Shown here in pieces: positions 941-64,000 of a DNA stretch of 64,000 nt. A program made the translations under genes and the position numbers. The notes beneath the pieces are model-generated. The model made no database searches and was not told the origin of the DNA. It saw only the letters and a program-made list of their open reading frames with translations. The stretch is from Okamejei kenojei (Eukaryota). Position 1 is the stretch's first letter. Every line of letters starts with the position of its first letter. Where the stretch lies: positions 20,708,001-20,772,000 of the forward strand of contig CM069147.1 of the NCBI GenBank assembly GCA_035221665.1, in the 5' to 3' direction.

Positions 941-1261
941 CATATACTATTAGACGTGATCCGGTTGAATTTCTTGGAGCCATTCCGTTACGAATCACCG
1001 AACACAGATACACACCAGAATCTTGAATCTTTGCATTATTCAACCTAAAGTACCCGCTTACTCGACCTCTCACGCCAAAACGTTTCCTGTCGTCGGTACC
1101 TTCACGTAGGTATTCCTTCTCGCCCTGTTTCCACCATTTGACTATTACCCGAGATTGATCTTTCGAAATGGGGAATATGCAGTAGAATGTGGCGTTCCCT
1201 CCTTTGAGTAAAATCACTTCTTTGGGCGTTTGCTCTACGTTGTATGAAATCTGTCCCCCAC
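941..1261 (-). CDS. Copy A exon 2, VJ-type V-set Ig domain (rest of gene lies left of the window)
   Basis: Same splice sites as copy B, 321 bp open, 6 nucleotide differences from copy B (overlaps ORF 894..1217). Confidence 0.92.
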
Positions 1262-1403
1262 CTGTTGGGAAACACAGTCAAGGAAAGGTGATTATGTTGA
1301 TGACGGCATACGGACGGCAGAATAAAAATGATGGCCTTACATGTAGCTACATTAAGGTGTCGGAAATTATTTTATAAGCTGAAAACAACGAACAGAGTCG
1401 TAC

Positions 1404-1455
1404 CTGTGCAAATATTCACAACGACAGCCAGTAAGTGAAATATACTGGCTTCCAT
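1404..1455 (-). CDS. Copy A exon 1, signal peptide MEASIFHLLAVVVNICT(G)
   Basis: ATG at 1455, CAG|GTAC donor; paralog of 52072-52123. Confidence 0.85.
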
Positions 1456-43195: not shown

Positions 43196-45062
43196 ACGTG
43201 GCCACGTGTGTTCTAGACAGGAGCCATACGTTATGCATTAATGTATTTGAATTAAATAAAAATAATGTAGGAAAGTGGCTCTAATTATTCGGGATTATGC
43301 TGGATGAAAGTGCAGCGAAACATAGCAAATTATCTACTTCTGCATCTCTTTACTGTGTTGAAAATGGTGGAAGCTGGAGTCAAATGAACACTGGAGCAAG
43401 ACATTCTGGCGAATTTCATGGAAAAGTATTTAGAAGTACCGGCAGGTTTATTTTCAATACTGTCAAGGGTGTTTTTATTCCAGGTAAATGTATTAATTTG
43501 ATCTTTGCATGCTGGTTGGGCGCAAATGGGATATGCAGGAATTTCATGACGCTGGATCAAATTATTGTGTGGCAGCGGTTTTCTCGTTAATTAACTATAT
43601 TACCCAGGTTGGTCATGTTTGCAAAGTTTGGACACATCCTATATGGCTAATTACCGTCGGAACATTTGATGATGTGGTCGAATATCAACAGCACTGCTGT
43701 GAAGAGTCATTTACAATATTCTGCTCACTGACTAATGCAATGATTGCATTAGTCTTGTTCCACGGGCCATCATTTCATTTGACGAATAAAATGTTACAGT
43801 AGCGAAAATATAAACCTGACATCAACTTGCATTTAGCTGTAGGTGGAATCAAAGATTAATGGGGGAAATAAGTCTGAAGGCGTATGAAGAAAATGACAGG
43901 ACAATGGTTTTATTAACACATTGCTTAAAAAAAAGGTGATTTTGATTGTTGCAAATTACTTCATCAATGTTGAGTCTAAATACATATAATGCGATTGAAC
44001 AGAGTAGATAAGGAGCTCAACGACCCATTGTTGTGACGTGGAGAATAAGAGGCCTCATCGCGATCGGTAATATATACACCGCGGTTACATACTGTACATG
44101 TAAACAAATCATATGAATATGGTGCTCTGGATCTGAATACCTATTAACCGCGCCATTCCTGATTTTCACTGCAACTATCAGGCAGGAGGTACTGAAGCGC
44201 ACATTGCCAGATTCAATTTGCTATTCACCTACATCGATTAGGATCCTGAAAGTGTTTGGAAACTAATGATCCTACCTTGAGAGCAGAACACTACGGACCT
44301 CCTCCTACACTACCATGCATTTGGTTCTTTTTAAGGTAATTTCCAATAATTCAACTATTGTTAATTGCCTCGGAATTATATACGCTCTACCACCTTCGAA
44401 AATACCTCCTATGTACAATGGTCGTAGTATAAATGCGTTAAAAAAATATTCTTCCAGAATAGATTTCAATGGAAATTGATCACAGCGCAAACTCTCGACA
44501 AAACATTGTGGTGGTTGTTGTGAAAAATAAAGTGTTTATAGTCTTTGGTATATTGAAAACTTTCTGTATTTAGGTCAGAATCAGATGAGACAGAACGATA
44601 TGGGGCCTAAATCCCCCGCCTCCGTTTTTCTTTCGGAAATAACAAATACATTGAAAATGACCGAGCGATCAGAAGTAACCATAAAACGTCTATTTTAGTT
44701 ATGTAACTGATAATAATAACGTAATTCAAAGCGTTTGGAAAGTTACTTTATCAGTTAAACACAACACATATTTCAAAATATCTATTCATTATCATAGTAA
44801 AGCAAGGCATCAAATATTTAATCATTAATCCCACAAGTAACTCACAGTCAATAATGTAGACGTGAGTACGTCGACCGATACTGATCATATTATTTTTTTC
44901 CAGAATTCCAGTGCCTATATCTAATTCGTCTGTAGGATGAACTTCAAAATATTAATGTTTACGTTTTGTAGGCTACTGTGGTAGGCACATCTTACAATTA
45001 CAATCATCTTAGGTAGCCATTCAGTATTCGCTGGAAGGCTGGGGGTTCAATGCTGGTCAGGT

Positions 45063-45138
45063 TCATTGGGTGTCGCTTGGTTGATCCTGCTTGAGGTTTC
45101 CAACACTCCCTACTTGATGGCTTTTTCTTACATAGACC
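45063..45138 (-). CDS. Copy B exon 5, short cytoplasmic tail to TGA
   Basis: Strong polypyrimidine acceptor ctctcttgtttgtgcag|; phase-2 reading gives RVYVRKSHQVGSVGNLKQDQPSDTQ*. Confidence 0.6.
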
Positions 45139-48100
45139 CTGCACAAACAAGAGAGGGTGGAGAAAACCTTTCTAACTACAAGTGCAATTTAATTATGCAA
45201 ACATTTGTTCTATAGCAGATAATTTAAGGATACTTTCTCAGGCGGATAAAATATATTCAGCAGTTAGAAATAACATCACATTTATAAATGGGCACAATTT
45301 CAGGAAATACAGAAGTTTACTTATCTCATTTACTCCAAAGGGATTGAAAACTGTAATTATTTTAAGTTTTAAAAAAAAGGAGTGGACTCATCGCATGAAG
45401 TAATTTTTGTAGAGACTGAAGTCAGCAGTTTACATTGCTGGTTGAAAACCCGAATTGAGAGGGAGCAAGAGGGAATGTGGGTCTGGTGGCTGAACCACTG
45501 AATTTCTTTCAAGTTTTATTTTATTTATGCCAGTTTCTGCATTTTTTACTTTTTGCGTTTGATAAAATATCTGCGCTTCAACACTCTACAATATTGAATA
45601 TTACCGGCGAAGAATGATTGAAGAAAAAAGTTGCACAAGAGGGAGCTTGATCTTTCCGGCTCTTGGATTCCTTGCCAGCTCATTGGATTTAACCAGAATG
45701 AACAATTTGAGCATTCACTGATGCTTATAGTTAAGTTACTTGCATCCAGATCTTTTTACTGGAAACGCTCTATATAATTCTTCATACTAAGTTGCCAAGA
45801 ATATATTGGCATTTCAAAGAATTGACAGTCCCAGTCCATCAGGTTTTAATTATATTTATGATCCTCTGCGCAATACATAAACTCTCGCAAATATATTTCC
45901 TAATTCCATGAAATATTGTACGAACATATATTTTCACATATATTACGTACCTTTTATAAAACGGCAACTGACAGTGCGTCCCAATAACGGTACCAATCAG
46001 GGTCAGGAGCACCAGAAAGCCCAGAGCATGTCTAATGTGGAAGGCGAAAGCATTAACTGCAGAAATAATGGGAGCAAATTAATTCCTGTGTGTTTGTGCT
46101 ATTGGTGAAACTTGTGTTAATTATTTCCGAGTATAGAAACGATGTCTGCTTGGGAAACTATTCTGAGGAGATTATTCTCCACCGGAGTGAACGGGGAGAT
46201 TTTTAATCGAGCTTCGAATAATTAGCAGCTGTGGAAAATGAAATAGTTGCTTTACTGAACCCAATGCAGGACGGCATACAAGTCACAGGTGGTTCGCGTT
46301 TTTCAGTGCAACGCAGTGAATGGCAAAAAATAGTGACAATCACCGAATTCCATTTGCTCAGCGGTGCGCTTGTTCAAATGAGAATGTTAGTGAATCAATA
46401 TGGATGTCGGCACGCCGTGGTAGAACTAGGATGTTTGTCAAGCCACACACATGCAAACAAAAACAACGCAGATATAAGGAACTGCATAAACGGATCTTGA
46501 GAACAACCCAAATGCTGGAGTAACACAGCAGACCAGCCAGCATCTACGGGAAAATGGATAGGCGACTATTTGAGTTGGGACCCTTCTTCAAATGTGGTGT
46601 AGTGGAGGGAGAAAGCTGGATAAGACCAAAGCGGATACAGGTGACGGCGGTTTGATTAGAAGCTGGTGGTCAGTTAAGGCTGGGGTGAAATGCAGTATTG
46701 GACGCCTCACTCGAAGCATCCCTTCAATTATAACACAACATAATTGTCGGTTTTAATCTGCTAAAGATGTCCTTTCAGTTTAGAAAGGCGTTACTTTTAG
46801 AATTCCGTACTTGAATTTTTCATAGTGGGAGTGGATGCCGCACCGAAGAATTTAGGGAGGACGGGTGGTTCGATTTTAACGAGGGTGAGCACGGTGAAGC
46901 AAAGGATTCTACATCAGGATTAAAAAAAAACGAGGAAGCGCGAGGGAAAACCTAAGCCCCTGAAATCAGTTGCGCCGCGAAGTGTGGAATCAACGGTGCA
47001 TTAGGAAATCTTTTTTAAAGTAACATGAAAGAAACATCAACGCTACCCAGTAGAAAGGCAAAATGTTTAAATTTGTTTTTCTATTTTGGGGAACAAATAA
47101 GACATTTTCATTGAAAACGATTAATTGATAATAGAAGGTAGACAAAATGCTGGAGAAACTCAGCGGGTGAGATAGCATCTGTGGAGCGCAGGAATGGGTG
47201 ACGTTTCCGGTCGAGACCCTTCTTCAGACGAGACCCTTCTTCACATCAGTCTGAAGAAGGATCTCGAGCCGAAACGATACCCGTTCCTTCGCTCCATAGA
47301 TGCTGCCTCACCCGCTGAGTTTCTCCAGCATTTTTGTCTACCTCCGGTTTTCCAGCATTTGCAGTTCTTTCTTAAACGTAGTTGATAATGGGTCCTCGCG
47401 GACAGGAACAAATAGAAATAGTAGTTTGCTTTTACGAATTTAATAGGAGATGGCTTTGTTGGCATCGTACCTTGGTTACATTCGGAACCAGCGATGACAG
47501 CCTGGGCTGAAGTAGTGAGGGAGACATGAGATATTAAACAGGTATATTTGATATCGCTCTGAAATGGTGGCAACGCGACCAAAGAGCTGGAAACCGTATA
47601 CAGTCCTTCGGCGTTCTTCTTTGTTTCGATCTGTATTTCAGATGTTGTTTCGACCCCATTTTTATACCAATTAAGCGTGAAATTCTCAGGATAGAATGCA
47701 GCTGTTTCACACACATGAATACAACTCGCGGTTGGATTCATTTCACGAGTCTTGGTGAAAATGTTCAGTGGAGTTGGAAGCGCTGCGGAACAGAACATGA
47801 ACACAATTAAATCACATTACGCCGTTGAAGGGTTGCTATTATTAACCGCGAGTGCGTTGTAATAATGACGCATTGGAAAATGTATTTGATATTACCTAGA
47901 CCAGGTGTTCATGCCTGATCCAAATCTCTCTTCCAGGCCGATGTTTCACGAGTCTTGCCGATTCAGTGATAATGCCGCTTCCTTCAAATATTTATGTAGG
48001 TTTATCTTATTAGAGTTTGAATAATAAATCAAATACAACGCGACATATGTTACCACGATGAGATTCTCTGAGTTTTTTAACTCAAAGATAACGGTACAGA

Positions 48101-51100
48101 AGAGATTCAGTATGAATTTTGAATTTGCCGGGATTGAGTCCCGTTTGTTTCCCTGGTCTGAACACAGCCGCGGTGTGATCTGGTGGACGTATATCAAGTT
48201 ACAAGAAGCATAAGTAGACGATACATGGAATGGGTTTTTTTTTCCATCGTAGAAGGCTTATGTTAAAATTAAAGGAAGGGTTTTCATATGGAATCTGACT
48301 GGACGATTTTTACACAGAGAGGTTGCTAACTGCATTTGGCATCCAGCGTAGGTGCTGTAGTCAGATAACATCACCAGGTTAATATGAATTCAATAGGCAA
48401 TAGGTGCAGGTGTAGGTCATTTGGCCCTTCGAGCCAGCACCGCCATTCAATGTGATCATGGCTGATCATCCCCAATCAGTACCCCGTTCCTGCCTTCTCC
48501 CCATATCCCCTGACCACTATTTTTAAGAGCCCTATCTAGCTCTCTCTTGAAAGCGTCCAGATAACCTGCCTCCACCGCCCTCCAAGGCAAATAATTCCAC
48601 AGACTCACCACTCTCTGTGAGAAAAAGTGTTTCCTGGTCTCCGTTCTAAATGGCTTACTCCTTATTCTTAAACTGTGGCCCCTGGTACTGGACTCCCCCA
48701 ACATCGGGAACATGTTTCCTGCCTCTAGTGTGTCCACGCCCTTAACAATCATATGTGTTTCAATGAGATTTCCTCTCATCCTTCTAAACTGAGTGTACAA
48801 GCCCAGCTGCTCCATTCTCTCAACACATGACAGTCCCGCCATCCCGGGAATTAACCTTGTAAATCTACGCTGCACGCCTTCAATAGCAAGAATGTCCTTC
48901 CTCAAATTCGGGGACCAAAACTGCACACAATACTCCAGGTGTGGTCTCACTAGGTCTCTGTACAACTGCAGAAGGACCTCTTGTACTGCCCCTCTTCCCA
49001 ACCTGACGCCATCAACAGATCATTGATGTATATTGTAAATAGCTGCGGTCCCAGCACCGAGCCTTGCGGTTCCCCACTAGCCACTGCCTGCCATTCTGAA
49101 AGGGACCCGTTAATCCCTACTCTTTGTTTCCTGTCTGCCAACCACTTCTCCATCCATGTCAGAATTCTACCAGAATTTTGCCCAGTAATCTCTTATTCAC
49201 ATTATGGGACCTTATCAAATGTTTTCTGAAAGTACAGGTACACTACATCCACTGGCTCTCCCTTGTCCATTTTTGTCGTTACATCTTCAAAAAATTCCAG
49301 ATTAGTCAAGCATGATTTCCCCTTCGTAAATCCATGCTGACTCGGATCGATCCTGTTACTGCTATCCAAATGTGCGGCTATCTCATCTTTTATAATTGAC
49401 TCCAGCATCTTCCCCACCACTGATGTCAGGCTAACTGGTCTATAATTCCCAGTCTGTAGAACATTGGAAAATTATCACCAACGCATCCACGTTTTCTAGA
49501 GCCACTTCCTTAAGTACCCAGGGATGCAGACCATCGGGCCCTGGGGATGCACAGACATTCTAATAGGCAAGTCGTAGTAGATAAGGACCTAACGCTGGTA
49601 AATTAAATTTGAGTAGATGGAGAAATAGGTCGGATGGACTTGGCGGACCAGAAGGCTATTCATGTGCTGTGCAACTCTGAGACTCCAAGTAGCAATGTGG
49701 TCAGACCGTGTTTATGATGAGAAACGTTTTCATGTGAATGTTCTTGAGACATACATTTCTTTTTCTTCTGCTATTGTAATGTGAATAGGTGGTAGGATTT
49801 GTGTTTTTCTCTGGTAATATTTCAACACTATTTTTGTGACCAAGGTTAATTCACGGGCTGGCGGGGCAGTAATATGTTGAAAGAATGGAGTGACTGGGCT
49901 TGTATACACTGAAATTTAGAAGGATGAGAGTGGATCTTATTGAAACATAGAAGACTATTAAGGGATTGGACATGTTAGAGGCAGGAAACATGTTCCCAAT
50001 GTTGGGGGAGTCCTGTACCAGGGGCCACAGTTTAAGAATAAGGTGTAGGCCATTTAGAAAGGAGATGAGGAATATATTTTTCACCCAGAGTTGTGAATCT
50101 GTGGAATTATCTGCCTCACAAGACAGTGGAGGCCGATTTTCTGGATGCTTTCAAGAGAGAGTTAGATACAGCTATGGGGAGATTGCAGGAACGGGGTACT
50201 GATTGTGGATGATCAGCCATGATCACAACGAATGGCAGTGCTGGCTCGCAGGGCCGAATGGCCTACTCCTGCACCTATTGTCTATTGACATTGCTTTATC
50301 ATAATTTCCCAATACAAGAACAGATGTTTACCTACGTCGTTAAAATCCAACATAAGGTAACTAAAAACGTTAGCATTTATTGAGAGAGGACTGGAATATA
50401 AACAATAAACAGAGATATAATGCTGAGGCTTCATAAGGCAATGGTCAGACCGCGTTAGAGTATTGTAAACAGTTTTGGGGGCCCGTACCTGAGGAGGGAT
50501 TTTCTAGCATTGAAAATAGTTCAGATGAGATTTACGAGAATTATCCAGGGACCGATTGAGTTAACGTATATTGAGCGATTGACGGTTCTGGGCCTATACA
50601 ATCTGTAGTTTAGAAGTATATGGAGGGGACCTTATTGAAACTTACCAAATAGTGAAGGACTTGGATAGAGTGGATGTGGACAGGGTGTTTCCAGGATTGG
50701 GAGAGTCTAAGACCAGTGGGCACAGTCTCATAACAAAAGTACATTCGTTTTGAAAGGAGACATGGAGGAATTTCTTAAGTCAGAGGGTGATGAAACTGTG
50801 GAATTAATTACCTCAATGGCCGTGGCGGCCAAGACTTCTGTATTTTTAAAGCTGAAATTGATGGGTTTTGATTAGTATGTATGTGAAAGGTTATGAGGCG
50901 AAGACAGGAAAATTAGGTTGAAAGGGAAATATCGCTCAGTCATGATTGAATGGCCCATTGGCCTCGATGGGTCGAATGGTCTTAGTCTGTTCCTATGACT
51001 TATGAACATGAATTTATGAACTTTGTATATTAAGTTCCATTGCGCTTCACGTCAGCATTATAAAATTTAGGGAGATGAATTGGGTGATGCCAGAGTAATT

Positions 51101-52123
51101 TGAGCCATTTAAAATACATGATCTGAGTAACATTCTCCAAATAAGGAAATAGAACATGAGCATTTGTTCACTTTCAGTTAATGCTAACACTGGAGCGATT
51201 GCATCCTGCTTTGGGCAAAACTGCACAATTCAACCGACTGCAACTCAATGAACATTCAAGGAAATATTTTCTTGGACTTATTGGATTTCCATAGGTTAAA
51301 GATCCATTATGAACTTTGAAGGAATTTAAAAAATATGAATTTGCTTTTATAAAATCGGACATTGCGTTTCCAATTTTGGCGAGATGAGTGAAATGGAACC
51401 GAATTTCATAAAGGAGGATAGGCATGCAGAGTTTTAAACCCTCTTGTCGCAGAATGTAGATAGAACGATAGAACAGATAGAACGATAGAACTGAACATAA
51501 CATACACAAAAGGCATTAAAGGACATCTTCACAGTGATTCGGTTTGCAAATTCCATGATAAATTCTTCCTTCTCCAATTATTTTTCGCTTACCATATACT
51601 ATTAGACGTGATCCGGTTGAATTTCTTGGAGCCATTCCGTTACGAATCACCGAACACAGATACACACCAGAATCTTGAATCTTTGCATTATTCAACTTAA
51701 AGTACCCGCTTACTCGACCTCTCACGCCAAAACGTTTCCTGTCGTCGGTACCTTCACGTTGGTATTCCTTCTCGCCCTGTTTCCACCATTTGACTATTAC
51801 CCGAGATTGATCTTTAGAAATGGGGAATATGCAGTAGAATGTGGCGTTCCCTCCTTTGAGTAAAATAACTTCTTTGGGCATTTGCTCTGCGTTGTATGAA
51901 ATCTGTCCCCCACCTGTTGGGAAACACAGTCAAGGAGAGGTGATTATGTTGATGACGGCATACGGACGGCAGAATAAAAGGGACGACGTTACATGCAGCT
52001 ACATTAAGGTGTAAACGTGTCGGAAATTATTTTATAAGCTAAAGCAGATGGAACAACGAACAAAGTTGTACCTGTGCAAATATTCACAACGACAGCCAGT
52101 AAGTGAAATATACTGGTTTCCAT
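45063..52123 (-). CDS. Complete non-rearranging IgSF receptor gene (copy B): leader-VJ-C1-TM(Arg)-cytoplasmic tail, 288 aa; NKp30/NCR3-like V joined to a C1 domain
   Basis: Exons 52123-52072, 51913-51593, 47782-47471, 46056-45951, 45138-45063, with AG/GT at every splice junction and compatible phases (1,1,1,2). Total 867 nt with an open frame: METSIFHLLAVVVNICTG-GGQISYNAEQMPKEV...YCIFP...VKWWKQG...DSGVYLC...NSTGSRLIVY-ALPTP...VCETAAFYPENFTLNWYKNG...YTCLISH...ECNQ-VNAFAFHIRHALGFLVLLTLIGTVIGTHCQLPFYK-RVYVRKSHQVGSVGNLKQDQPSDTQ*. Confidence 0.85.
45951..46056 (-). CDS. Copy B exon 4, transmembrane exon with Arg (FAFHIRHALGFLVLLTLIGTVIG)
   Basis: Acceptor atttctgcag|, donor AAG|gtacgt, 106 bp, phase 1 in and phase 2 out; hydrophobic helix; not present in the ORF track. 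Confidence 0.8.
47132..47372. mobile_element. Palindromic Penelope-end element (inverted repeat) in intron 3 of copy B
   Basis: 47135-47229 is the approximate reverse complement of 47249-47344. Confidence 0.8.
47471..47782 (-). CDS. Copy B exon 3, C1-set Ig domain
   Basis: Acceptor ttccgcag|, donor AAG|gtacg, 312 bp phase 1-1; C-x4-FYP, WYKNG, GLYTVSSSL and YTCLISH C1 motifs (inside ORF 47241..47804). Confidence 0.92.
48392..49548 (-). mobile_element. CR1 LINE with internal deletions, in intron 2 of copy B
   Basis: ORFs 48456..49001, 48950..49153, 49202..49420; (caatagg) tail. Confidence 0.9.
49840..50288 (+). mobile_element. CR1 3' fragment
   Basis: ORF 49966..50202; tail ctattgtctattg. 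Confidence 0.85.
50370..51005 (+). mobile_element. Old CR1 3' fragment (predates the gene duplication)
   Basis: Degenerate CR1 C-terminus; its 3' part is shared with 1-350. Confidence 0.8.
51593..51913 (-). CDS. Copy B exon 2, V-set Ig domain with J-like G strand in the same exon
   Basis: Acceptor ttcccaacag|, donor |gtaag, 321 bp phase 1-1; B-strand Cys, C-strand Trp, DSGVYLC, STGSRLIV. Confidence 0.92.
52072..52123 (-). CDS. Copy B exon 1, signal peptide METSIFHLLAVVVNICT(G)
   Basis: ATG at 52123, hydrophobic core, CAG|GTAC donor in phase 1; nearly identical to 1404-1455. Confidence 0.85.
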
Positions 52124-52737
52124 TCCGGCCACCAGCTACAACTAGTTTGTCTGCAGAAAGCAGCGTTGGCAAGTGTAAAGTGAGGGCGTGGTTTACAGCC
52201 GATGAAGGATGATTCATATCCTGTCACCGAAGGCTGCAAATATCATTTGATTGTTTGGATTTCGAACGTCTTCTAAAATCAAATCGGCCGCACGTAGTGG
52301 AAATTATAATTTAATTATAATTATAAGCAAAGTAGTGGAAATTATAATTTAAATGTTATTCTTCTTGGTGCTTTTACTCCTATTCTCAATCATAAATTTA
52401 ATTCTCTATCATATAAGACATAGAAATGACGACATCGAAAATTGGCCAGATTTCAAGCAGGCATGCCCCATTTATGTCCACAATTTAGTTCGTTAACACC
52501 GTTTTGTTTTGCACCGTTTGGACTGTCATCGATATTCAAAATCAATTTATCAATAGTAAGTAGGATTTTTTTTTCGCAGACTGCATAAAATAAATGCACG
52601 ATACGAACGTGTGCTCCATCGATCAGCATCTGCTTATGTGTCAATCCGTGATCACTTGTGTTCCGGGTCGTGATTCAGTGGGCGGTTGGGCAGAGGCACT
52701 GGGACCGAGAGTTGATCAAGCCGGATTCACGTTGCAT

Positions 52738-53163
52738 TGTGTAGGAAAGAACTGCCGATGCTGGGATAATTCGAAGGTATACGCTAGATGCTGGAGTAAC
52801 TCAGCGGGACAGGCTGCATCTCTGGAGAGGAGGAATGGGTGACGTTTCGGGTCGAGACCCTTCTTCAGTCAGGGGAATGGGCGATACAGCGATAGAATGT
52901 ATTCGGAGACAGTAAGACTGATGGCAGAACTGGGAAAGGGGAGGAGATGGAGAGAGAGGGAAAGCAAGGGCTATTTGAAATTATAGAAGTATGAGGTGCT
53001 GTCCCTCCAATTTGCGCTGGGCCTCACTCTGACAACGAAGGAGGCCCAGGACAGAAAGGTCAGATTGGGAATGGGAGGGGGGGTTAAAGTGCTGAGCAAC
53101 CGGGTAATCAGGTAGGTTAAGGCGGACTAAGCGGGGGTGTTCGGCGAAACGATCGCCAAAAGA
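52738..53163 (-). mobile_element. Penelope-like fragment (paralog of 1852-2278)
   Basis: ORF 52981..53175 GIY-YIG C-terminus. Confidence 0.8.
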
Positions 53164-54280
53164 CTTCAACTTCACACAGCTCAGACAATCATTTCCAGCC
53201 GTTAGAACAGCTTCGCTTCTCTAACGACCGACCAACGTAATCATCTTACGGCGGATTGAACAACGAGAATAAATAGTTTATGCGTGCAAAGCATAGTTTA
53301 TGGAAACAGTACGGATTGGCGGTTGTGCTCGTATAACTATTAACTGGTCAGTTTATCTAAGCATAACTTTGAAAACTGTAAGTAAATTCCTATCATTATC
53401 AAATGCATAAGCCTAACATTCGTCTGCTGATTACATATTATCTATTATGAAAATGATGATCAAGAATTTCGTCTGCTCCGTGTGAAATATATGTGTTCTT
53501 TGGTTGTTCCACACTCTGGCAATTTCAGTTTTATTGCATTAGGGGAATTATATGGCAATTTTCTTTCACTTTAATCTGTAATTGAACCACATGTCAAACT
53601 ACGATTTTTATTTCTCTCTTGATAAAGGTTCAACGATGTATTCAGTGTCGTGAACAGTTTGCGCAAAACGGAGCCAGAATGAAAAGAAAAAAAATCACTT
53701 TTATTAACTTCACGCATCTGGAATAATGTTTATCAATAAAATATTTGACTCCGCATTCTTCCCTTTTTTATTGGCCAGGGTGCGACTCGTCCATGATGAT
53801 AGATATCCACACAATATATTTTTATCAGCCTTTAATTAATTATGGGTTAACTCTAAGCAATATACATACGTGACAAGAGCAGGAGGGCAAGGGACATAAG
53901 ATTAATATTTATTGTTTCACAGACACGCTGTACGATTTCGAGAAAAGGAAAATACCAGCAGATGTTGGAAAATCTGAAGGGAAAATGCTGCAAATATGCG
54001 GCACATCAGCCCGCAACTGAATGTCGCTCATTTCAAGCCTTATTACAAAATATTGTTTGACTTATGTCTGTCATCCGCTATGTGAAACCTTGCTCATTAG
54101 GATCACTTTCCACTCAACTTCTGGTTTTAGACTCCCCTCTGCTGGCAAAAATAAGGTGGCCGTCCATTTTATCTATGCTTATTATTTTATAGATCTCTAT
54201 AAGATCCCTCTCAGACTCCCCCGCTCCGGGGGGGGGGGGGGGGGGGGGGTGGGGGTGTATCTTAGCTAGCCTCTCGTAGC

Positions 54281-54359
54281 AAATGCAAACATTTGTTCTA
54301 CAGAAGATAATTTAACGATACTTTGTCAGGAGGATAAAATATATTCAACATTTAGAAAT
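54281..54359 (-). pseudogene. Remnant of a third paralog: copy of intron-4 sequence 45195-45271
   Basis: atgcaaacatttgttcta...gataatttaa.gatacttt.tcagg.ggataaaatatattca matches 45195-45271. Confidence 0.75.
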
Positions 54360-54435
54360 TCTCTGCCACAGAAGGTAGTTGAGGCCAGTTCGTTGGCTAT
54401 ATTTAAGGGGAGTTAGATGTGGTCCTTGTGGCTAA
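54357..54435 (+). mobile_element. Short CR1 fragment
   Basis: attctctgccacagaaggtagttgaggccagttc...gtggctaa, as at 15847-15926. Confidence 0.8.
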
Positions 54436-57400
54436 CTCTTTAGTAGCCAGCAGACTCCATGCTAACGCACTATCCACATCCGCACAAGCATCAGGATATT
54501 GTACCCGCACGCCCCTAGCTCCCTCTCTAGTGCTCGTGACGGACCACGTAACAGCCAGGGCTATGTATGCAGTGGTGTTTTAATAAAAGTACTTAATACT
54601 TAAAAGACATCGTATTACGATCTTGCCGGAATCAGAAGTGGCAGTTCCTATGTCTCCGGTTTTCGCGTTTTATTCATTAGTCCCAGTACCACCCCCCCCC
54701 GCTTCCAAACACGATGGCTTCTGCCTGCCGTAAAGCCTGACGTCCTGTTCTTGATAGCGGACATCCCTCATCGCTGGAGTGTGTTCCTACGGACTTTGAG
54801 CATTACGTTACATTGCCCACCCTGCTGTGGCCCCCCCCGCTGTCAAGCTTCCCCTGCTGCTTAACTTGGCTGGCTCGGAGGCGCTCGAGCGTTTCGGAGT
54901 CGTTCTCTATGGACATGGTGAGGAGTGCTGCTGACCCCGACTGCTTCATTGCTAAAATTACGACGATGTGCGACCATTCCCACTAATACACATTCTGGAG
55001 CGTTTTAGTTGTTCCCAGCCTACAGAACCCCGGGGAGTCTATTGACAATTTTTATGGCCGCGTTGCGCCATGTTGGCTCGCCGATTTAACCTACGTGACC
55101 TGACCCGCCGATGGCCTTGACCCTGCCATTCTGGTCTATGTTCTGCGGGACGAAAAGCAGCGCTCCGAGCTATGCGTAAGCCTGATACTGACACTCATGA
55201 GGCGGCTCATGCCTCTAGTGTTAGCCGAGGACTGGCTCCGTCAGCTATACCTGACCCAGTGGTCCACACACCCCGTCTAGCGGTCCCCGTAAAATGCTCA
55301 CTTCGGCGACAAGGGCACACACCGCTGCTGGGCTCCAACCGCCTCAATCGGTGTCGACACAAATGTAACTTTGTCCTCTCACCGTTATAATGTGTGCCCT
55401 GCGTTGGGAACACCTGTAACTTTTTGCAACAAGCTCGAACACATTTTCAGCGGCATGCCGTTCCCCCGTGGAAACATGGCCAAGCCACACAGAGCCGTCT
55501 CGTTATCTGACGTTGTGGATGACAGTTGTCTTGGTTCGTATCGGCAGCACGATGAGTCTTTCCCCCGTCTGACCCAGAATCTTTGCAGAGCGAGCTGGAG
55601 GTGTTTTCTCTGCGAGGTGCAGCTGGACTGATAACAGACCCGAACCCGTCCAAATCACGGTGAATGGCACGACCTTCTCTGCTAAGGTGGACACTGGTTG
55701 CAGCTGCCTAACGTGTATGTCAACACTCTGGTTTAACAAGATAAGAAAATAATGAGCATGTTTCCACAGACAGTGCCTGTTCTCCGTGCCTATGGGGTTC
55801 GGCGGGCTTGTTCCTAGTGGGGAAGGTCACTCTCCACTGCACGTGCGGTCGGCCACTCGGCCCCTCTCTTTCTTCCACTTTAGAGGTATTCGTGGACAGT
55901 AAATGTGTTCCCCTGCTAGGCGTGGAGGCCTGCAGGACCTCGGGTTGGTGCGTTTCCACAGCGATGTCCACCTGGTTGAGGCGTCCCTGGATCCGCTGGC
56001 CTGAGTTCCCGGACCGGTTTGACTCGAAGCTGGGGAGGTTGCCCGTGCAGCTACAAGATTGCCATCGATCCCAGACGTTACGCCCAGTTGTCCGTCCCCC
56101 GCACGGGTGTCCTTTGCCATGAAGGGCAAGGTCGAGTCTGCTCTTCGCGAGAGATGGTGGCCACGGGCATCCTGGCGCCCTTTACGGCCTCCAACCCAAT
56201 GGGTTTCGACTATGGTTTGTATTGCTGCAAAGAAGGACAAAAGCGAAATACGGATCTGCATCAACCCCAAAGACTTGAACTTGGCCATCAGGCGCCCCGT
56301 ACTATCCCATGCGGACGGTGGAGGAAGTTGCTGCACAGGTCGGCCCTGCCACCGTGTTCTCGGTTCTTGATGCCAAGAGTTCGTTCTGGACAGATTCCTC
56401 TGGACGAGCGGTCCTCGCACCTGACAAACCTTCAGCACACCTTTCGGCAGGTATCGCTTCCTCCGCATGCCGTTAGGGATCAACTCTGCCAGTGAGGTGT
56501 TCCAGAGGACCATGGAACAACTGTTTGCTGACCTCCGTGTGCCATCATTGTCGACGACATCCTGGTTTATGGGAAGGATGTCGCTGAGCACGACCACACG
56601 ACACCGTCGCCAGGTGCTGCAGCGGGCCCGGGAGATCAACCTGAAAGCTCAACCCGAAAAAATGCCGATTCCGGGTTCCTGAGGGCTCACCTACGTGGGT
56701 CATGTTTCACGGCATCGGGGCTGAAGCCTGAACCGCAGAAGACGGCCGCTATATCCGATATGCCTGCGCCTGTGGATGTGCCTGGCCTGCAGCGTTTCTT
56801 GGGCATGGTTAACTACCTGGGAAAGTTCATCCCCGACCCTGAGCGAACTGAGTGCCCCTCTGCCGGGATCTGGTAAAAAAGGACACTGCCTTGGGCTTGG
56901 TTTCCCGCAACACCAGCGCGCGTTTGACACCCCGGTAATCCCGTCCAAGCATGGGTCACTCTAGCATGCCGACGCTGAAGTACTATCGATCTCCAGCGCA
57001 CCCCCCACACCCATCGTTCTCACGTGTGACTGCCTCAAAGTTTGGACCTCGGGCCGCCTGCCTGCAGATCCATGACGGGGTGCAACTGCCTGTTATCTTA
57101 CGCGTCCCGCACAATGACGTCCGCTGAGCAAAGCTATGCCAGATTGAAAAGGAGCTGCTGGCAGTTGTCTTCGCATGCTCCAAATTCAAGGACTATATCC
57201 TGGCAGCTGTTTCCTGTCGAGACGGACCACCAGCCGCTGGTCACCATCCTCAACAAGCCAATACACATGCCTCCCCTCCCCCGGCTCCAGCGCATGATGC
57301 TCCAGCTGCAACGCTTCAGTTTTGCGGTGGTTTTTAACCGCAAGGGCAGGGACATGGTTTTTCTTGCGGACACGCGTCGCGAGCGCCTCTTTGCATCCAC

Positions 57401-59207
57401 GACCCAGCATCCGTATGAGGCGTCCGATTTGATGGTTTTGGGGCGTGAACTTCGTGCCCTCTGGTCAGTTGAAGTCCCTAGCCGAGCACAACGGCAGCAG
57501 ACGCTTCCCTACAGCAGCTGGCCGCGATCATCCAGCAAGGTTGGCCAGACCGTCGTTCTGCCCTGCCGGACGCAGCGGTTTGCCTTACTTCTTGGTTCGT
57601 GATGATTGGTGCTGCGTGGTGGTGTGATAGTGAAGGGCACAAGGTGGTGGTGCCCGAAGCATTACGAGAAACAATACTTTTTAGACGGCTCATCGTGGAC
57701 ATCCCGGGGCCGAGGCGACCTTGCAGTCGCGCAGAGCCAGTTCTTCTGGCCCGACATGCCTCGCTACTTTCCGGGATAGGGTCTCCGCGTGCCCTACCTT
57801 AACAGCCTCGCTCCTCAACAACAGCGGCAGCCGCTCCTGCAGCAGCCAGCAGTGACCTGCCATGGTCTGCGCTAGCAACTGACATCTTTGAATGGCACGG
57901 AAAGCACTTCCTGGTGCTTGTCGACTCGTACTCCAGCTGGTTCGAAGTTGACCAGCTCCACTCGCTCTCTTCCTCTGCGTCATCGACAAGCTGCGCCGCC
58001 ACTTTGCCACATTCGGGTCTCCTCCGCCAGCCTGCAGTCAGACAACGCAGCCAGTTCACCAGTGCCGAGTTCCGAGAGTTTGCTGACCGTTGGAACTTTA
58101 GACATTACACCAGCAGCCCGGATACCCACAGAGCAATGGACTGGCCGAGCGCGCGGTTCGCAGTGCTAAAGAGTTGTTGGAACGTTGCCGCCTATCCCGC
58201 ACCGACATTTACCTGTCCCTGCTGAACCTCCGCAACATCTCCCGCGACCGAGGCCCTGGGCTCCCCGGCTCAGCGCCTAATGTCCGGACAGTGACGAGGC
58301 CCCACGGTCCCGGTGTCTCAAACAGTCCCTGTCCCCCTCCGTCCTGAAACCTGCCTTGGTCCGGGAAACGGTCATTGCTGTCAAACACCGTATCCAGAAG
58401 CGTTCCCATTTGACAGGTCTTGCCGTGTTCTCTGTCCTCTTCTCCCCGGTCAGGTAGTCCGTATGTGGTCCCCTTCTGGCCGCTCCGGGCTGGCTGTGGT
58501 CGTCGGCTCTGCCGGTTCCCCTCGCTCCTACCTGGTCAACCGCGCGACGGCAGGGTGTTCCGCGGTCCCGCCAGCATCTCCAGGCTCGTGAACGAGCCTC
58601 TCCCTTCCCCGGCGGCTCCTTATGCCCCTCCGCTGCCTCTGTCGCAGCCCTGTGCTCTGCCAGTTCCTCTGGGGCCGGCCTCCCCTCGTCCTCCTCCGGA
58701 GCGTCTTTCTGCGGCTTCCCCGCCGTTCTCTTCCCCTCCCTCCCCCCGATGCCTTCATCGCCTAGGGGTTCTCCTGTCCATAGCCCTCCTGTCCATATAG
58801 CCCCCACCTTGATCCAAGCGTTCCCGCTTGTTGCTGTCGGGAAGGAGGTGATGCGAGGTGCGGACCCGGTCTGGTCGCCTGGTCAGGCCGCCGGTCCGCT
58901 ACGGCGATTACGTGTGATTATGTACACCTTTAATTTACTGTTTGTACTTACCCTGGCGTATGAGACGTGGTCGCCCTTCACTCACTGCGTGTTTTGGTAG
59001 AGGAAGGATGTAGATGCTGTGTTACACCTTTAATTGCCAGCATGATTCCATGCTAAACCACTCCCACAGCAGTCAGTATAATTGTACCCGCACGCCCCTA
59101 GCTCCTCTCTAGTGCTCGTGACGGACCACGTACAGCCAGGGCTATGTATGCAGTGTGTTTAATAAAAGTACTTAAGACTTAAAGACATCGTAGTACGATC
59201 TTCCAAC
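54436..59207 (+). mobile_element. Gypsy LTR retrotransposon, heavily frameshifted
   Basis: 5' LTR ~54436-54623 and 3' LTR 59009-59207 after PPT agaggaagga; tcagaagtgg PBS remnant; VDTG, IRICINPKDLNLAI, MPLGINSASEVFQRTMEQLFADL, ETDHQPLVTILNKP, LVDSYSSWFEVD; homologous to the 22.9-41 kb Gypsy. Confidence 0.88.
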
Positions 59208-62200
59208 GGCCACGGACTTCGGATGGGAGTCAGCGGCCACTATCCCCGGAGCTGCCCGCAACACCGGCAGCACCAGCTCCGTGGGCTGGGATAAGGCGGA
59301 AATCGGGGAGCCCTGCACAGCCAGGACCCGACTCTCCACCACGGCTGCCAATGAAACCACATGGTGGTAGGAGCACCGCGCGGGAGCAGGGTAGGGAAGA
59401 CCCTGACTCCCTACCACTGTCACCTAAACATTGGGACAGTGGCATAAAGGTGGGTAAAAATTTGTTCCCCACTCTGCGGCACGTTCTGTCTCCCCTGCTA
59501 TGCAGGTCACCAGAGGGCGGACCAGGGGAAGAACCGCACTAAGGTCGAAAAGCCCCGCTGCAGCGGCCGGCGTCGACCTGCCACCGGAGCAGTCCGCCAG
59601 ATCGTGGGCCGGTGAGGGATCGAGGTCTGAGTCTGGGAGCCCTGCAGGTGCGGCCGGCGCAGACTCGCCACCAGGGGAGCCAGCCAGATCGTGGGCCGGT
59701 GGTAAATCATCTCGGTCACCGCACCCCGCGTTAGCGGCTGGACGTGACCGAACATCGCCTTTAATCGAGGTCTGAGCCTGGGAGCCCCGCTGGTGCAGCT
59801 GGCGCAGACTCGCCACCGGGGGAGCCTGCCAGATCGCAGGCCGGTGGCAAATCATCTCGGTCACCGCACCCCGCGTTAGTGGCTGGACGTGACCGAACAT
59901 CGCCTTGTCCCGGGTAAGACAGGCGGCAAGCCTGCGTGGATATTGGTGAACCCTGCTTCAGTGGCTGGAACCGACACCTCACCGCTCATGTCTTTCTAGA
60001 CAGGCTGGGCCACCACAGTCCGGAAGACCGCGGACTAGCGGCATGTCCGCACGGGAGTCGCATAGCCCCGCTGGAGTGGCAGGCAGCGACATCCTGCCTA
60101 GGTACCCTAGACATCACCTCAACGAGGTGCGGGCCGATGGCAGAAGCCTCAATAGTTCAGGAGAACCTGAGGAAGTCGACTTGCTGTCCGCAGATGCGGC
60201 GGCGGTCGCATGGCCCACATGGAGCGCATGATGAGCGACTCCTTGAGCGAGATCTCCCACAGCAGGATCGGATGTCCAGGAGACAGGGATCTGGGCCATC
60301 CAGCATATCCCCTTCATCGGTGGGGAGTGCCAGGAGTCAGCAGCTGGCTGATGTTGAAGAGGGATTGGCGCAGGAACCTGCAGCACCTGAGAAACCCCAA
60401 GAGGAACTTGTTGATGTGGTTTCCAAATTTGCCAAAACTAGCGGCAAGCATTGACTCCTCACAACACACCAGCTGTAGGAACCAGTCTGACCGAGGAATG
60501 AATAAATACAAGGCCCAAACAACTGTGCTTCGTTGAACGTGGCGACAGTCAACACGCCCATCTGGGGCAACATCAGTCCAGGGATTAGGGCACCAACAGG
60601 AGCTCAAACTTCAATAAATCCTGAAATTGTTGACGTCGGGAATCACTGCCTTTGCCAGGTCGATTGATGGCATGGAGATGACGGAGGAGCAGGAAGATGC
60701 TCTTGCGCTACTGTGTAATACACAGTACGAGATAAACTCCTTCCGGGAAATCTCCACCAAACCAACTCACAACCCAAAATTCTCGTGGGTCTGTCAAAAC
60801 CTATGCTACGCGCCCGCCACCAAGACAGTTGTTCGGTGAAGACCTGCCAAAACAGGTAAAAGACCTGGATGAGGAGGCAAAAGCGGTCGGGTTGATGAAA
60901 CCACCATCCTCGAGCAGGCCACCGGCGTATCACAGACAGCATCCTTACGCTACGTCTAATAGGCCTCGGGTTCAACCCGACAGGGCTATCAGAACCTATC
61001 CACCGGTCGCTCCCTATCTACAAAAGCCTTTTAGGCAGGGCCCACAGCGACCAGCGTGGAAGATACGCTAACACCACATCCCAGTAACACTATGAAACAA
61101 AAAAACCCAGAACATCAAGGCTGCCGGTAACCATGGAAGTAAGGGGGTCTGGTTCTCTTGGAAGTGCTGCATGTATAACCTCACAAGTAGGAGGGAAGTT
61201 GCGTACATTCTGGGATGCATGGGTTTCTGATTGTCACTATCCCAGGGAACAAAGCAATAGACATAATAGAGGCATGTAACAGCCTTGCTTGCGCCAGGAA
61301 ACCGACTATTAGACATGCTGCTAAGGTAATTGGCAAACTTGTAGCTACATCCAGCTGCACAATTTGGGCCGTTACACTATCAAAACTTGCAAAGAGCAAA
61401 ATTCTCAGCATTAAAAGCGAATGCTGGACATCTTTACAGGCCTGTGCAGCTGCCAAGCAAGGCATAAATTGGTGGATTAGCAATGTTTGTGATTGTTTAA
61501 TCCCATCATTACATCAAACCCATCAGTTGTGTTACAAACCGACGCATGCGCCAAGGGCTGGGGGGCTACCGACACCACTTTCAGTTGGGGTGGTAGATGG
61601 GATTTGCATGAGTCTTCAATCACAAGGTATAAACTATTTAGAAATGCTGGGAGCATGTCACGGGCTGCGGGCTTACTGCACTAATCTGCATCATACGCAC
61701 GTCCAACTTCAAAATGAATAATACCACTGAGGTGGCATATTTAAACCATATTGGTGGTATCAAGTCAATATCTTGTGATGAATTGGCAAAAATTAATTTG
61801 GCTCTGGTGTATTGAAAGAAATATTTGGATATCAGCTACGTACCATCCGGTTAAGCTCAAATACAGTGGCGGACACCAGGTCACGAGTATTTAATAACGA
61901 CATCAAGTGGATGTTGAACCTCCAAATATTTGCTAAAATTATAGCCAAATATGGAACACCAAATATCAACCTCTTTGCGTCCAGGTTGAACCATCAGATA
62001 CCAACATATGTCTCTTGGGAACCAGATCCTGGGGCAGTGGCGATGGACGCATTCTCTCTGCATTGGGGGAAATGGGGTTCCTATGCTTTCCCCCATTCTG
62101 CTTCATCAGTTGGGTATTGCAGAAAATTCAACCAGATTCTGCAACAGAAAGGACCATGGACATCATACAGCATTGTGCAGAGAGTCCACTAGGAAGCAGT

Positions 62201-62470: not shown

Positions 62471-62474
62471 ATAA

Positions 62475-63837: not shown

Positions 63838-64000
63838 AAAATGTTTAAATTTGTTTTTCTATTTTGGAGAACAAATAAGACATTTTAATTGAAAACAAAT
63901 GTAATTGATAATAGAAGGTAAGCAAAATGCTGGAGAAACTCAGCAGGTGAGATAGCATCTCTGGGGCGAAGGAATGGGTGGCTTCAAATATTTATGTAGG
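63835..64000 (-). pseudogene. Remnant of a third paralog: intron-3 sequence fused to intron-2 sequence, C1 exon absent
   Basis: 63835-63980 matches 47057-47200; 63982-64000 is identical to 47982-48000 (cttcaaatatttatgtagg). Confidence 0.7.

What the first reader, a model, noticed from the sequence alone, without database searches (positions are those of the whole stretch)
45063..52123. Intact non-rearranging VJ-C1-TM(Arg) receptor gene: an antigen-receptor-chain layout without V(D)J recombination
Seen: five canonical-splice exons give an open 288-aa protein with leader, V, C1, TM and a short tail. The V exon already includes the J-like G strand (RNSTGSRLIVY) and no RSS flanks it. The TM has an Arg near its N-terminal side, and the tail has no ITIM or ITAM. 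Established: C1-set domains are largely limited to Ig, TCR, MHC, b2m, tapasin, SIRP and B7-type molecules. A germline-joined VJ domain plus TM Arg is the NKp30/NCR3 signature for FcR-gamma/CD3-zeta pairing, but mammalian NKp30 has no C1. Non-rearranging VJ-C1 genes (e.g. chicken PRARP, shark UrIg) are discussed as relics of the pre-RAG antigen-receptor ancestor. Inference: this is an activating NK/lymphocyte receptor of a poorly characterised chondrichthyan VJ-C1 family. The leader, TM and tail exons are missing from the ORF track, so automated annotation could easily truncate or mislabel it.
Basis: partly seen in the sequence, partly recalled or inferred. Interest (0 to 1): 0.85.

Follow-up and report, generated by a model that had tools for sequence, protein, structure and literature searches.

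The report
Shark-type V-C1 activating receptor gene
This is an intact five-exon gene for a cell-surface immune receptor shaped like a single T-cell-receptor chain but needing no gene rearrangement. It belongs to a large, unnamed family of paired activating and inhibitory receptors found in sharks, rays and chimaeras.

Summary
Five minus-strand exons with canonical AG/GT sites give one open 288-codon frame: leader, V, C1, TM and tail. The V exon runs through a J-like G strand to a splice donor, and no RSS lies within 9.5 kb. The TM carries an Arg. The tail has no ITIM or ITAM.

The gene is not unique. A second copy's leader and V exons lie at 941-1455. The V domain finds about 100 V-C1-TM proteins, and every one whose source I looked up is chondrichthyan. 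They carry eight or more contradictory automatic names (SIRP-alpha-like, tapasin-related-like, NCR3LG1-like and others).

In that family all 18 members with a membrane-embedded Arg/Lys have short tails, while most others carry long ITIM/ITSM tails. The switch happened at least 11 times. This gene is therefore most likely the activating half of a paired-receptor system.

Sequence and fold searches cannot tell whether SIRP, NKp30, UrIg or Ig/TCR is the nearest relative. The "pre-RAG relic" reading is untested. No RNA data were available, so splicing and expression are unproven.

Other first-stage notes report similar VJ-C1 genes elsewhere in this genome, including 258 kb upstream on the same piece.

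The parts
52072..52123 (-). Leader exon. ATG in the context GGA-ATG-G, 17 codons plus 1 nt (METSIFHLLAVVVNICT), donor GT, phase 1. This is the split-leader layout.
   Evidence: The paralog leader at 1404-1455 differs by 1 nt.
51593..51913 (-). V exon, 321 nt. V-set domain with canonical Cys27, Trp42 and Cys86. It includes a J-like G strand (NSTGSRLIVY) that ends directly at the splice donor. No RSS.
   Evidence: Pfam V-set 30.4 bits. Family HMM 125.9 bits. AF2 model pLDDT 87 with a G strand at 101-105. RSS scan found none.
47471..47782 (-). C1 exon, 312 nt. C1-set domain (…VCETAAFYPENFTLNWYKNG…YTCLISHVSL…). It ends with a membrane-proximal Cys in GSECNQ.
   Evidence: Pfam C1-set 37.4 bits. PDB matches are UrIg2, SIRP-gamma/alpha and IgM. 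AF2 pLDDT 90, and all structural neighbours are C1-set domains. Family HMM 117.9 bits.
45951..46056 (-). Transmembrane exon. Peptide (V)NAFAFHIRHALGFLVLLTLIGTVIGTHCQLPFYK, with Arg at the eighth in-frame residue of that peptide, counted from N. Donor AG|GTACGT, phase 2.
   Evidence: hydropathy; resembles the Arg-type TM of Hypanus P0003 and Hemitrygon P0152.
45063..45138 (-). Cytoplasmic tail exon up to and including the stop. The in-frame peptide is VYVRKSHQVGSVGNLKQDQPSDTQ*, preceded by an Arg codon split across the junction with the TM exon. No ITIM, ITSM or ITAM.
52124..52314 (-). Proximal upstream region (5'UTR or promoter). It is almost identical in the two paralogs, with 2 differences in about 191 bp.
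   Evidence: Introns between the same copies are 83.5-92.7% identical.
941..1455 (-). Leader and V exons of a tandem paralog. The V domain is 96% identical in amino acids and 98.1% in nucleotides, with the same splice sites. Its C1, TM and tail exons would lie beyond the left end of the window.
44817..44822 (-). Nearest polyadenylation-type hexamer (ATTAAA), 240 nt after the stop. Candidate only.

Best explanation
The locus encodes a type I membrane receptor made of a germline-joined V(J) domain, one C1-set domain, a transmembrane helix with an Arg near its outer end, and a short tail of about 30 residues with no signalling motif.

It is an activating-type member of a large, lineage-wide chondrichthyan family of non-rearranging V(J)-C1 receptors. 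That family also contains inhibitory members with long ITIM/ITSM tails.

Proposed mechanism:
- The membrane-distal V domain binds a ligand that is still unknown.
- The C1 domain acts as a stalk and possibly as a dimerisation module. A Cys lies just before the membrane.
- The Arg pairs inside the membrane with the Asp of an ITAM adaptor of the CD3-zeta/FcR-gamma or DAP12 type, and that adaptor carries the signal.

Shown here: gene structure, domain identities, family membership, tandem duplication, stronger conservation of exons and promoter than of introns, and the family-wide coupling of an embedded basic residue with a short tail.

Inferred: adaptor pairing, activating function, expressing cell type and ligand.
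For: Gene model and domains:
- Open 288-codon frame with canonical splice sites.
- V-set and C1-set above the Pfam cut-offs.
- Confident AF2 folds, pLDDT 87 and 90. All C1 structural neighbours are C1-set domains.

Family:
- An exhaustive HMMER search with the V exon gave 149 hits. About 100 are single-V proteins, and most of those also show a C1 domain and a TM segment.
- All 30 representatives whose source I looked up are sharks, rays, skates or chimaera.
- Two profile searches returned 56 and 23 proteins. All that carry a source name are chondrichthyan.
- Family HMMs score the window exons at 118-126 bits.
- V and C1 trees both place the gene in a batoid clade that is sister to a shark clade, with support 95 and 86.

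Paired-receptor signal:
- 18 of 18 members with an embedded Arg/Lys have tails of 50 residues or fewer, against 14 of 65 others.
- The trait changed at least 11 times on the tree.
- Independent pairs go the same way 5.9 to 0, sign-test median p about 0.03.
- Two Heterodontus proteins, P0101 (ITIM tail) and P0108 (embedded Arg, short tail), are 87% identical across the ectodomain.
- The window TM aligns with the Arg-type TM of P0003 and P0152.

Constraint:
- The paralog V exons are 98.1% identical and the proximal upstream region about 99%.
- The introns between the same copies are 83.5-92.7% identical.
Against: - There is no transcript evidence. No RNA run holds the C1 exon, and the runs laid were DNA contigs.
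- The J-like motif lacks the first Gly of G-x-G in this copy.
- The hydrophobic run after the Arg is 18-20 residues long, and the Arg is flanked by two His. It could therefore sit just outside the bilayer.
- Adaptor identity is open. Akula et al. 2014 (PMC4016189) found no FcR-gamma homologue in the shark data then available. An FcR-gamma-type gene is claimed only in an unchecked first-stage note for this genome.
- pN/pS between the two V copies is 0.58, based on only 6 differences, which is uninformative.
Confidence: 0.7

Rival explanations
1. The gene is a member of the published shark NCR3 (NKp30) family. In that case it is a known, MHC-linked VJ receptor family, and the C1 exon is an optional module.
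For: - The V is VJ-type with a short C'-C'' region like NKp30. It also has a TM Arg and a short tail.
- NKp30 (6yjp) aligns over 101 residues at Z 12.5 and 23% identity.
- Relatives have predicted isoforms that skip exactly the C1 exon and give an NKp30-like V-TM layout. P0138 equals P0203 minus residues 126-219 with 288 of 288 identical, and P0136 relates to P0139 in the same way.
- Eight divergent nurse-shark NCR3 subtypes are cited in PMC12227049.
Against: - Papers that discuss shark NCR3 treat it as a VJ-only gene and present UrIg as the novel VJ-C1 gene of the elasmobranch MHC (PMC10751288; PMC12227049).
- No hit among the roughly 30 named relatives is called NCR3.
- The NKp30 structural match is tied with TCR V, IgNAR V, CD79b, PD-1 and NCAM.
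- No MHC gene lies in the window, and first-stage notes place MHC genes on other pieces.
- The primary paper (Kinlein 2021) was not held, so the sequences could not be compared.
Confidence: 0.2
2. The gene is a chondrichthyan SIRP orthologue or co-orthologue, as the automatic annotations of its relatives say. It would work like SIRP-beta.
For: - The best single-domain PDB matches of the C1 exon are SIRP-gamma D2 (E 5e-5) and SIRP-alpha D3 (E 2e-5).
- The family profile aligns across V+C1 of SIRP-alpha and SIRP-gamma.
- The ESM Atlas lists a SHPS1 fragment cluster among C1 look-alikes.
- SIRP is also a paired ITIM/charged-TM family with a VJ-type V domain.
Against: - There is only one C1 exon, whereas SIRP has two.
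- The charged residue is Arg rather than the DAP12-type Lys.
- SIRP V is not among the 60 best sequence or profile matches of the V domain.
- UrIg2, IgM and IgA chains score as well as or better than SIRP.
- The word-index profile searches listed no protein named for a bony vertebrate.
Confidence: 0.15
3. The copy is an unexpressed or decaying duplicate in a birth-and-death cluster. It looks intact only because the duplication or a gene conversion is recent.
For: - No RNA evidence.
- The gene sits in retrotransposon-dominated DNA.
- High exon identity between the copies could reflect gene conversion rather than selection.
- The J motif departs from the family consensus.
Against: - All five exons are open and all eight splice sites are canonical.
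- Exons and the proximal promoter are clearly better conserved than introns between the copies: 98-99% against 83-93%.
- In contigs of related organisms, the three TM-exon differences I decoded by hand from the table are T18V, T22I and H6R. Two are hydrophobic and one is basic, and no listed difference touches the Arg codon.
Confidence: 0.12

Closest known systems
SIRP family (SIRP-alpha, -beta, -gamma)
   Same: - Non-rearranging VJ-type V domain followed by C1-set domains.
- Clustered paired genes, with ITIM forms and short-tail forms carrying a charged TM residue.
- The C1 exon's best single-domain PDB matches are SIRP D2 and D3.
   Different: - One C1 domain rather than two.
- Arg near the outer end of the TM rather than the DAP12-type Lys.
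- The V domain is not detectably closer to SIRP V than to many others.
- No orthology was shown.
NKp30 / NCR3
   Same: - VJ-type V with a short C'-C'' region.
- Arg at the ectodomain/TM boundary.
- Short tail without motifs.
- Multigene and divergent in sharks and frogs (literature).
- C1-skipped isoforms of relatives reproduce its layout.
   Different: - This gene has a C1 exon.
- Structural similarity is only generic (Z 12.5, 23% identity).
- MHC linkage is not seen here.
UrIg and UrIg2 (elasmobranch non-rearranging Ig-like genes, PMC12227049)
   Same: - Single-exon VJ, split leader and C1-type domains in elasmobranchs.
- UrIg2 (9dmx) is the best whole-chain PDB match of the C1 exon (E 5e-16, the sum of three weak domain hits).
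   Different: - UrIg has 3 C domains and is secreted. UrIg2 has 9-11 C domains.
- Both are essentially single genes, without activating/inhibitory pairs.
- Here there is one C1 domain and a large multigene family.
TCR and Ig chains
   Same: - Leader / V(J) / C1 / connecting-peptide Cys / TM with a basic residue / short tail is the layout of a TCR chain.
- The V profile's best single-domain PDB hits include TCR V-alpha and V-beta, IgNAR V and CD79b.
   Different: - No RSS.
- No separate J or D segments.
- V and J lie in one exon.
PRARP (chicken and other bony vertebrates; Fu et al. 2019, cited in PMC10751288)
   Same: From my own recollection of the abstract, PRARP is a non-rearranging VJ gene with a V-C1 structure in non-avian species and an ITIM tail. 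That is the same layout as the inhibitory members of this family.
   Different: No PRARP sequence was available, so the relationship is untested. PRARP is described with an ITIM, not with a TM Arg.

Membership tests
Unnamed chondrichthyan V(J)-C1-TM paired-receptor family (NCBI auto-names: SIRP-alpha-like, tapasin-related-like, NCR3LG1-like and others) | N-terminal V domain with the family signature (VxVxWWKxGE, DSGVYxC, NGTGSxLxV) | tested here: met
   A family V HMM built without the window scores 125.9 bits, E 4e-38. Identity to Hypanus and Scyliorhinus members is 56-60%. One deviation: NST replaces NGT.
Unnamed chondrichthyan V(J)-C1-TM paired-receptor family (NCBI auto-names: SIRP-alpha-like, tapasin-related-like, NCR3LG1-like and others) | A single C1-set domain directly after the V domain | tested here: met
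   The family C1 HMM scores 117.9 bits. There is only one C1 exon in the locus.
Unnamed chondrichthyan V(J)-C1-TM paired-receptor family (NCBI auto-names: SIRP-alpha-like, tapasin-related-like, NCR3LG1-like and others) | Either an embedded TM Arg/Lys with a short tail, or a long ITIM/ITSM tail | tested here: met
   The window has AFAFHI-R-HALGF… and a tail of about 30 residues without motifs. Family association is 18/18 against 14/65.
SIRP | V domain followed by two C1-set domains | tested here: not met
   Only one C1 exon lies between V and TM. HMM and tblastn scans of the whole window found no second one.
SIRP | Sequence orthology to vertebrate SIRPs | tested here: inconclusive
   C1 matches SIRP D2/D3 at E about 1e-5 per domain. 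The V does not stand out. The word-index profile searches listed no protein named for a bony vertebrate.
NKp30 / NCR3 | Single VJ-type Ig domain with no C domain | tested here: not met
   The model includes a C1 exon. A C1-skipped product would stay in frame (phase 1/1) and is predicted for relatives, but is not shown here.
NKp30 / NCR3 | Arg at the outer TM boundary and a short tail without motifs | tested here: met
NKp30 / NCR3 | MHC linkage and B7-H6 binding | not testable with these tools
Rearranging antigen receptors (Ig/TCR) | RSS (heptamer, 12 or 23 spacer, nonamer) at the 3' end of V and separate J segments | tested here: not met
   0 RSS-like sites in 44000-53500, against 1.4 expected. 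The J-like strand is inside the V exon and ends at a GT donor.
UrIg / UrIg2 | VJ exon followed by three or more C1-type domains | tested here: not met
   There is one C1 exon. The similarity to UrIg2 is the sum of three 17-23-bit domain hits.
PRARP | Orthology to chicken or bony-vertebrate PRARP V-C1 genes | not tested
   No PRARP sequence could be obtained with the tools, and the paper was not held.

The most novel reading that the evidence does not exclude
The family is a surviving non-rearranging sister of the chain that the RAG transposon invaded. It would be a V(J)-C1 chain that forms disulfide-linked dimers through its membrane-proximal Cys and its C1 domain, and signals through its TM Arg with a CD3-zeta/FcR-gamma-type adaptor. 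That would make it a living model of the pre-RAG antigen receptor. Optional C1-exon skipping would link the NKp30 (V-only) and TCR-like (V-C1) layouts.
Probability: 0.07. Interest if true: 0.85.

Novelty: new member of a known kind. Interest (0 to 1): 0.45.

Why it matters
Sharks and rays are the oldest lineage with Ig/TCR/MHC immunity. A 2014 survey (PMC4016189) found no LRC-type (KIR/LILR-like) receptor genes in the shark genomes then available.

A large, chondrichthyan-wide family of V(J)-C1 receptors could be their functional counterpart. It has repeatedly switched between ITIM tails and an embedded TM Arg. It also adds many genes to the short list of non-rearranging VJ-C1 genes used to reason about the origin of antigen receptors.

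On the practical side, the family is inconsistently labelled in public annotations as SIRP, tapasin-related, B7-H6, CD276, Ig lambda, TCR beta or MHC class II beta. It needs curation. This particular gene is one ordinary member of the family.

Tried and rejected
Expression
- No RNA run holds the C1 exon.
- The one read-laying run showed only DNA contigs of related organisms and very deep repeats.
- It gave no junction information.

Genomic context of homologues

Protein searches
- The word-index search with the C1 exon found only a genomic read-through ORF, P0001, at 88% identity. No annotated product of this gene was found.
- Two profile searches listed no protein named for a bony vertebrate.
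- This may reflect the word index rather than true absence.

Fold and feature searches
- VIA-align on the V and C1 models gave broad ties. V ranged over Z 12.4-14.2 across NCAM, TCR, IgNAR, CD79b, PD-1 and NKp30. C1 ranged over Z 11.4-13.5 across MHC II, IgNAR C, UrIg2, SIRP, TCR C and B7-H6.
- These results confirm the folds but do not rank the families.
- ESM Atlas hits were generic V-set and C1-set clusters.

Literature
- Kinlein 2021 (shark NCR3), Flajnik 2012 and 2023, Ohta 2015 and Fu 2019 (PRARP) were not held.

Smaller checks
- The near-octamer ATTTGCAG about 115 bp upstream of the ATG has one mismatch to ATTTGCAT. Exact octamers occur at chance frequency in the window, so I dropped it.
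- A note on this window proposes a third paralog at 54281-64000. Neither tblastn with about 220 family proteins nor the family HMMs found any V- or C1-like exon there.

Steps not taken
- The joined 288-aa product was not searched or folded as a whole. Only frame continuity was computed from window coordinates, and all searches were done exon by exon by reference.


Full report
**Observation**

I re-derived the model from the sequence. On the minus strand the exons are:
- leader 52072-52123
- V 51593-51913
- C1 47471-47782
- TM 45951-46056
- tail 45063-45138

Each is bounded by AG and GT. Intron phases are 1, 1, 1 and 2. Joined in silico from window coordinates, the exons give 867 nt, which is 288 codons and one terminal stop. 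I used the joined product only to check frame continuity. It was not sent to any search or fold tool, and every search was done exon by exon by reference.

Pfam calls V-set (30.4 bits against a cut-off of 26) and C1-set (37.4 against 21). The V exon begins with the last residues of a split leader. It runs through the F strand (DSGVYLCSV), a 10-residue CDR3-like loop and a G strand (STGSRLIVY) to a GT donor. V and a J-like segment therefore lie in one exon.

A relaxed RSS scan of 9.5 kb around the gene found nothing, against 1.4 expected in shuffles. The TM exon encodes (V)NAFAFHIRHALGFLVLLTLIGTVIGTHCQLPFYK. The tail (R)VYVRKSHQVGSVGNLKQDQPSDTQ has no ITIM, ITSM or ITAM.

- The first Gly of the J-type G-x-G is Ser in this gene and in its paralog.
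- The V domain has a short C'-C'' region. There are 18 residues from Trp42 to Arg60-Phe61, and the AF2 model (pLDDT 87) shows no C'/C'' strands.

**Surroundings**

The rest of the window is dominated by reverse-transcriptase and integrase ORFs of retroelements.

A second leader and V exon lie at 1404-1455 and 941-1261, with the same splice sites. The duplicated block spans about 50664-54241 and matches 5-3356 at roughly 90% identity. The paralog's C1, TM and tail exons would lie off the left edge of the window.

Conservation between the two copies is uneven:

| Region | Identity |
|---|---|
| V exons | 98.1% (6 differences in 318 nt) |
| About 190 bp upstream of the ATG | about 99% (2 differences) |
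| Intron 2 | 92.7% |
| Intron 1 | 83.5% |

Coding and promoter-proximal DNA is therefore kept more alike than neutral DNA. The cause is selection or gene conversion.

HMM and tblastn scans found exactly two V exons and one C1 exon in the 64 kb.

**What it belongs to**

An exhaustive HMMER search with the V exon gave 149 hits. About 100 are proteins of 200-500 residues with one N-terminal V domain. In most of them the window's C1 exon also finds a C1 domain, followed by a TM segment.

I looked up 30 representatives. All are from sharks, rays, skates or the chimaera *Callorhinchus*. The genera are *Hypanus*, *Hemitrygon*, *Mobula*, *Narcine*, *Leucoraja*, *Scyliorhinus*, *Mustelus*, *Heterodontus*, *Heptranchias*, *Chiloscyllium*, *Carcharodon* and *Cetorhinus*; the profile searches added *Amblyraja* and others. 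Their names are automatic and mutually contradictory:
- SIRP-alpha-like
- SIRP-beta-1-like
- tapasin-related-like
- NCR3LG1-like
- CD276 homolog
- Ig lambda-like
- TCR beta-like
- MHC class II beta-like
- PD-L1-like
- uncharacterized

Profile searches with 27 full-length members and with V-TM members listed only proteins named for chondrichthyan species.

Family HMMs built without the window score its V, paralog V and C1 at 126, 131 and 118 bits.

In separate V and C1 trees the gene sits in a clade of batoid sequences that is sister to a shark clade. SH-aLRT support is 95 for V and 86 for C1. This points to an old subfamily and suggests the window comes from a batoid. The closest annotated proteins are only 54-60% identical. 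No product of this gene was found in the collection.

**How it probably works**

Across the family I classified TM regions.

- One class has a hydrophobic run of only 16-21 residues (17 or fewer in most). It is preceded by an Arg, rarely a Lys, which is itself preceded by hydrophobic residues. Examples are SLFVWILR|CAMGVL… and PVHLIYR|SILGIL…. The basic residue must therefore lie inside the bilayer.
- All 18 such proteins have tails of 50 residues or fewer.
- Of the other 65 proteins, 51 have long tails, mostly with ITIM or ITSM patterns.
- The trait changed at least 11 times on the V tree.
- In phylogenetically independent pairs the short tail follows the embedded basic residue 5.9 to 0, with median p about 0.03.
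- In *Heterodontus*, an ITIM protein (P0101) and an embedded-Arg protein (P0108) are 87% identical over the aligned ectodomain.

This is the signature of a paired inhibitory/activating receptor family.

The window gene has the activating pattern: AFAFHI-R-HALGFLVLLTLIGTVIGT with a short tail. Its TM aligns with the Arg-type TM of *Hypanus* P0003 and *Hemitrygon* P0152.

From established knowledge of NKp30, NKp46, Fc-alpha-RI, GPVI and the TCR, an Arg near the outer leaflet pairs with the Asp of CD3-zeta or FcR-gamma dimers. I infer the same here, but no adaptor was tested.

The adaptor question is open. A 2014 survey found no FcR-gamma in the shark data then available (PMC4016189). An unchecked first-stage note claims an FcR-gamma-type gene elsewhere in this genome.

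**Comparison with known families**

- The C1 exon's best PDB matches are UrIg2, SIRP-gamma, SIRP-alpha and IgM. UrIg2 scores E 5e-16, but that is the sum of three domain hits of 17-23 bits. SIRP-gamma D2 and SIRP-alpha D3 score E about 1e-5 each.
- The V exon's best PDB matches are weak: PD-L1 V, amphioxus VJ-C2 and Robo.
- With a family V profile, the best single-domain hits are TCR V-alpha and V-beta, IgNAR V and CD79b.
- The full family profile aligns across V+C1 of Ig chains, UrIg2 and SIRP.
- Structure searches confirm the folds but give broad ties. NKp30 scores Z 12.5 at 23% identity among about 50 V or I domains at Z 12.4-14.2. The C1 model matches only C1-set domains, at Z 11.4-13.5.

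The gene fails defining features of each named family:
- SIRP has two C1 domains and a Lys.
- NKp30 has no C domain.
- UrIg and UrIg2 have three or more C domains.
- Ig/TCR genes have RSS and separate J segments.

PRARP could not be tested.

The readable literature treats shark NCR3 as a VJ-only, MHC-linked gene. It presents UrIg and UrIg2 as the elasmobranch VJ-C1 genes (PMC10751288, PMC12227049). I found no description of this multigene V-C1-TM family, but the key NCR3 paper (Kinlein 2021) was not held.

One link to NKp30 deserves mention. In *Scyliorhinus* and *Heterodontus*, predicted isoforms differ only by exact removal of the 94-residue C1 exon. P0138 against P0203 is 288 of 288 identical outside that exon. 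The phase-1/phase-1 C1 exon here would allow the same skip, producing an NKp30-like V-TM(Arg) product.

**What is missing**

- No RNA run holds the C1 exon. The laid runs were DNA contigs of related organisms, about 95-97% identical over the exons and 86-96% over the introns.
- Splicing, expression, cell type, adaptor and ligand are therefore unshown.

**Verdict**

This is a real, apparently intact gene and a correctly read architecture. It is one tandemly duplicated member of a large, publicly visible but uncurated chondrichthyan family. It is best understood as the activating half of a paired V(J)-C1 receptor system.

The "antigen-receptor ancestor relic" reading is not excluded, but nothing here supports it.

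Other first-stage notes report similar genes in this genome. One is 258 kb upstream and one 4.9 Mb downstream on the same piece, and others are on other pieces. This agrees with a multigene family.

Noticed in passing
window 47137-47343 (intron 3, about 130 bp after the C1 donor). Related pieces lie at 46480-46600, 52700-52842 and 63831-63980.: A roughly 200-bp foldback (palindromic) element, GGTAGACAAAATGCTGGAGAAACTCAGCGGGTGAG … CTCACCCGCTGAGTTTCTCCAGCATTTTTGTCTACC. Its copy number is extremely high: summed word depth is about 2.6 million in each of three DNA runs. It is MITE- or SINE-like and lies right next to a coding exon.
   Followed up: partly
window 48390-48859 and 49841-50288 (intron 2): Two copies of a retroelement 3' part in inverted orientation, 80% identical and about 1 kb apart. 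Both are also very high-copy in the laid runs. They could pair in the pre-mRNA of this gene.
   Followed up: no
window 47490-47501 (end of the C1 exon, GSEC) and 45971-45973 (GTHC at the inner end of the TM): There is a membrane-proximal Cys just before the TM, conserved in the 88%-identical ORF P0001 but absent from the closest annotated relatives. A second Cys lies at the cytoplasmic end of the TM. They are candidates for an interchain disulfide and for palmitoylation respectively.
   Followed up: no
P0138/P0203 (Scyliorhinus canicula) and P0136/P0139 (Heterodontus francisci): Predicted isoform pairs differ only by exact removal of the C1 exon. This turns a V-C1-TM receptor into an NKp30-like V-TM receptor.
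   Followed up: partly
window 54281-64000: A note on this window proposes a third, exon-depleted paralog here. Family HMMs and tblastn found no V- or C1-like exon in this stretch. The duplicated block ends near 54241, and beyond it lies G+C-rich retroelement sequence.
   Followed up: partly
window 8000-16800, 23600-27100, 31000-34300 and 62400-63500: Several long ORFs of LTR-type elements (gag, protease, RT, integrase) and LINE-type elements (endonuclease, RT) fill the 43 kb between the two receptor copies. I only described them and did not compare or reconstruct them.
   Followed up: no
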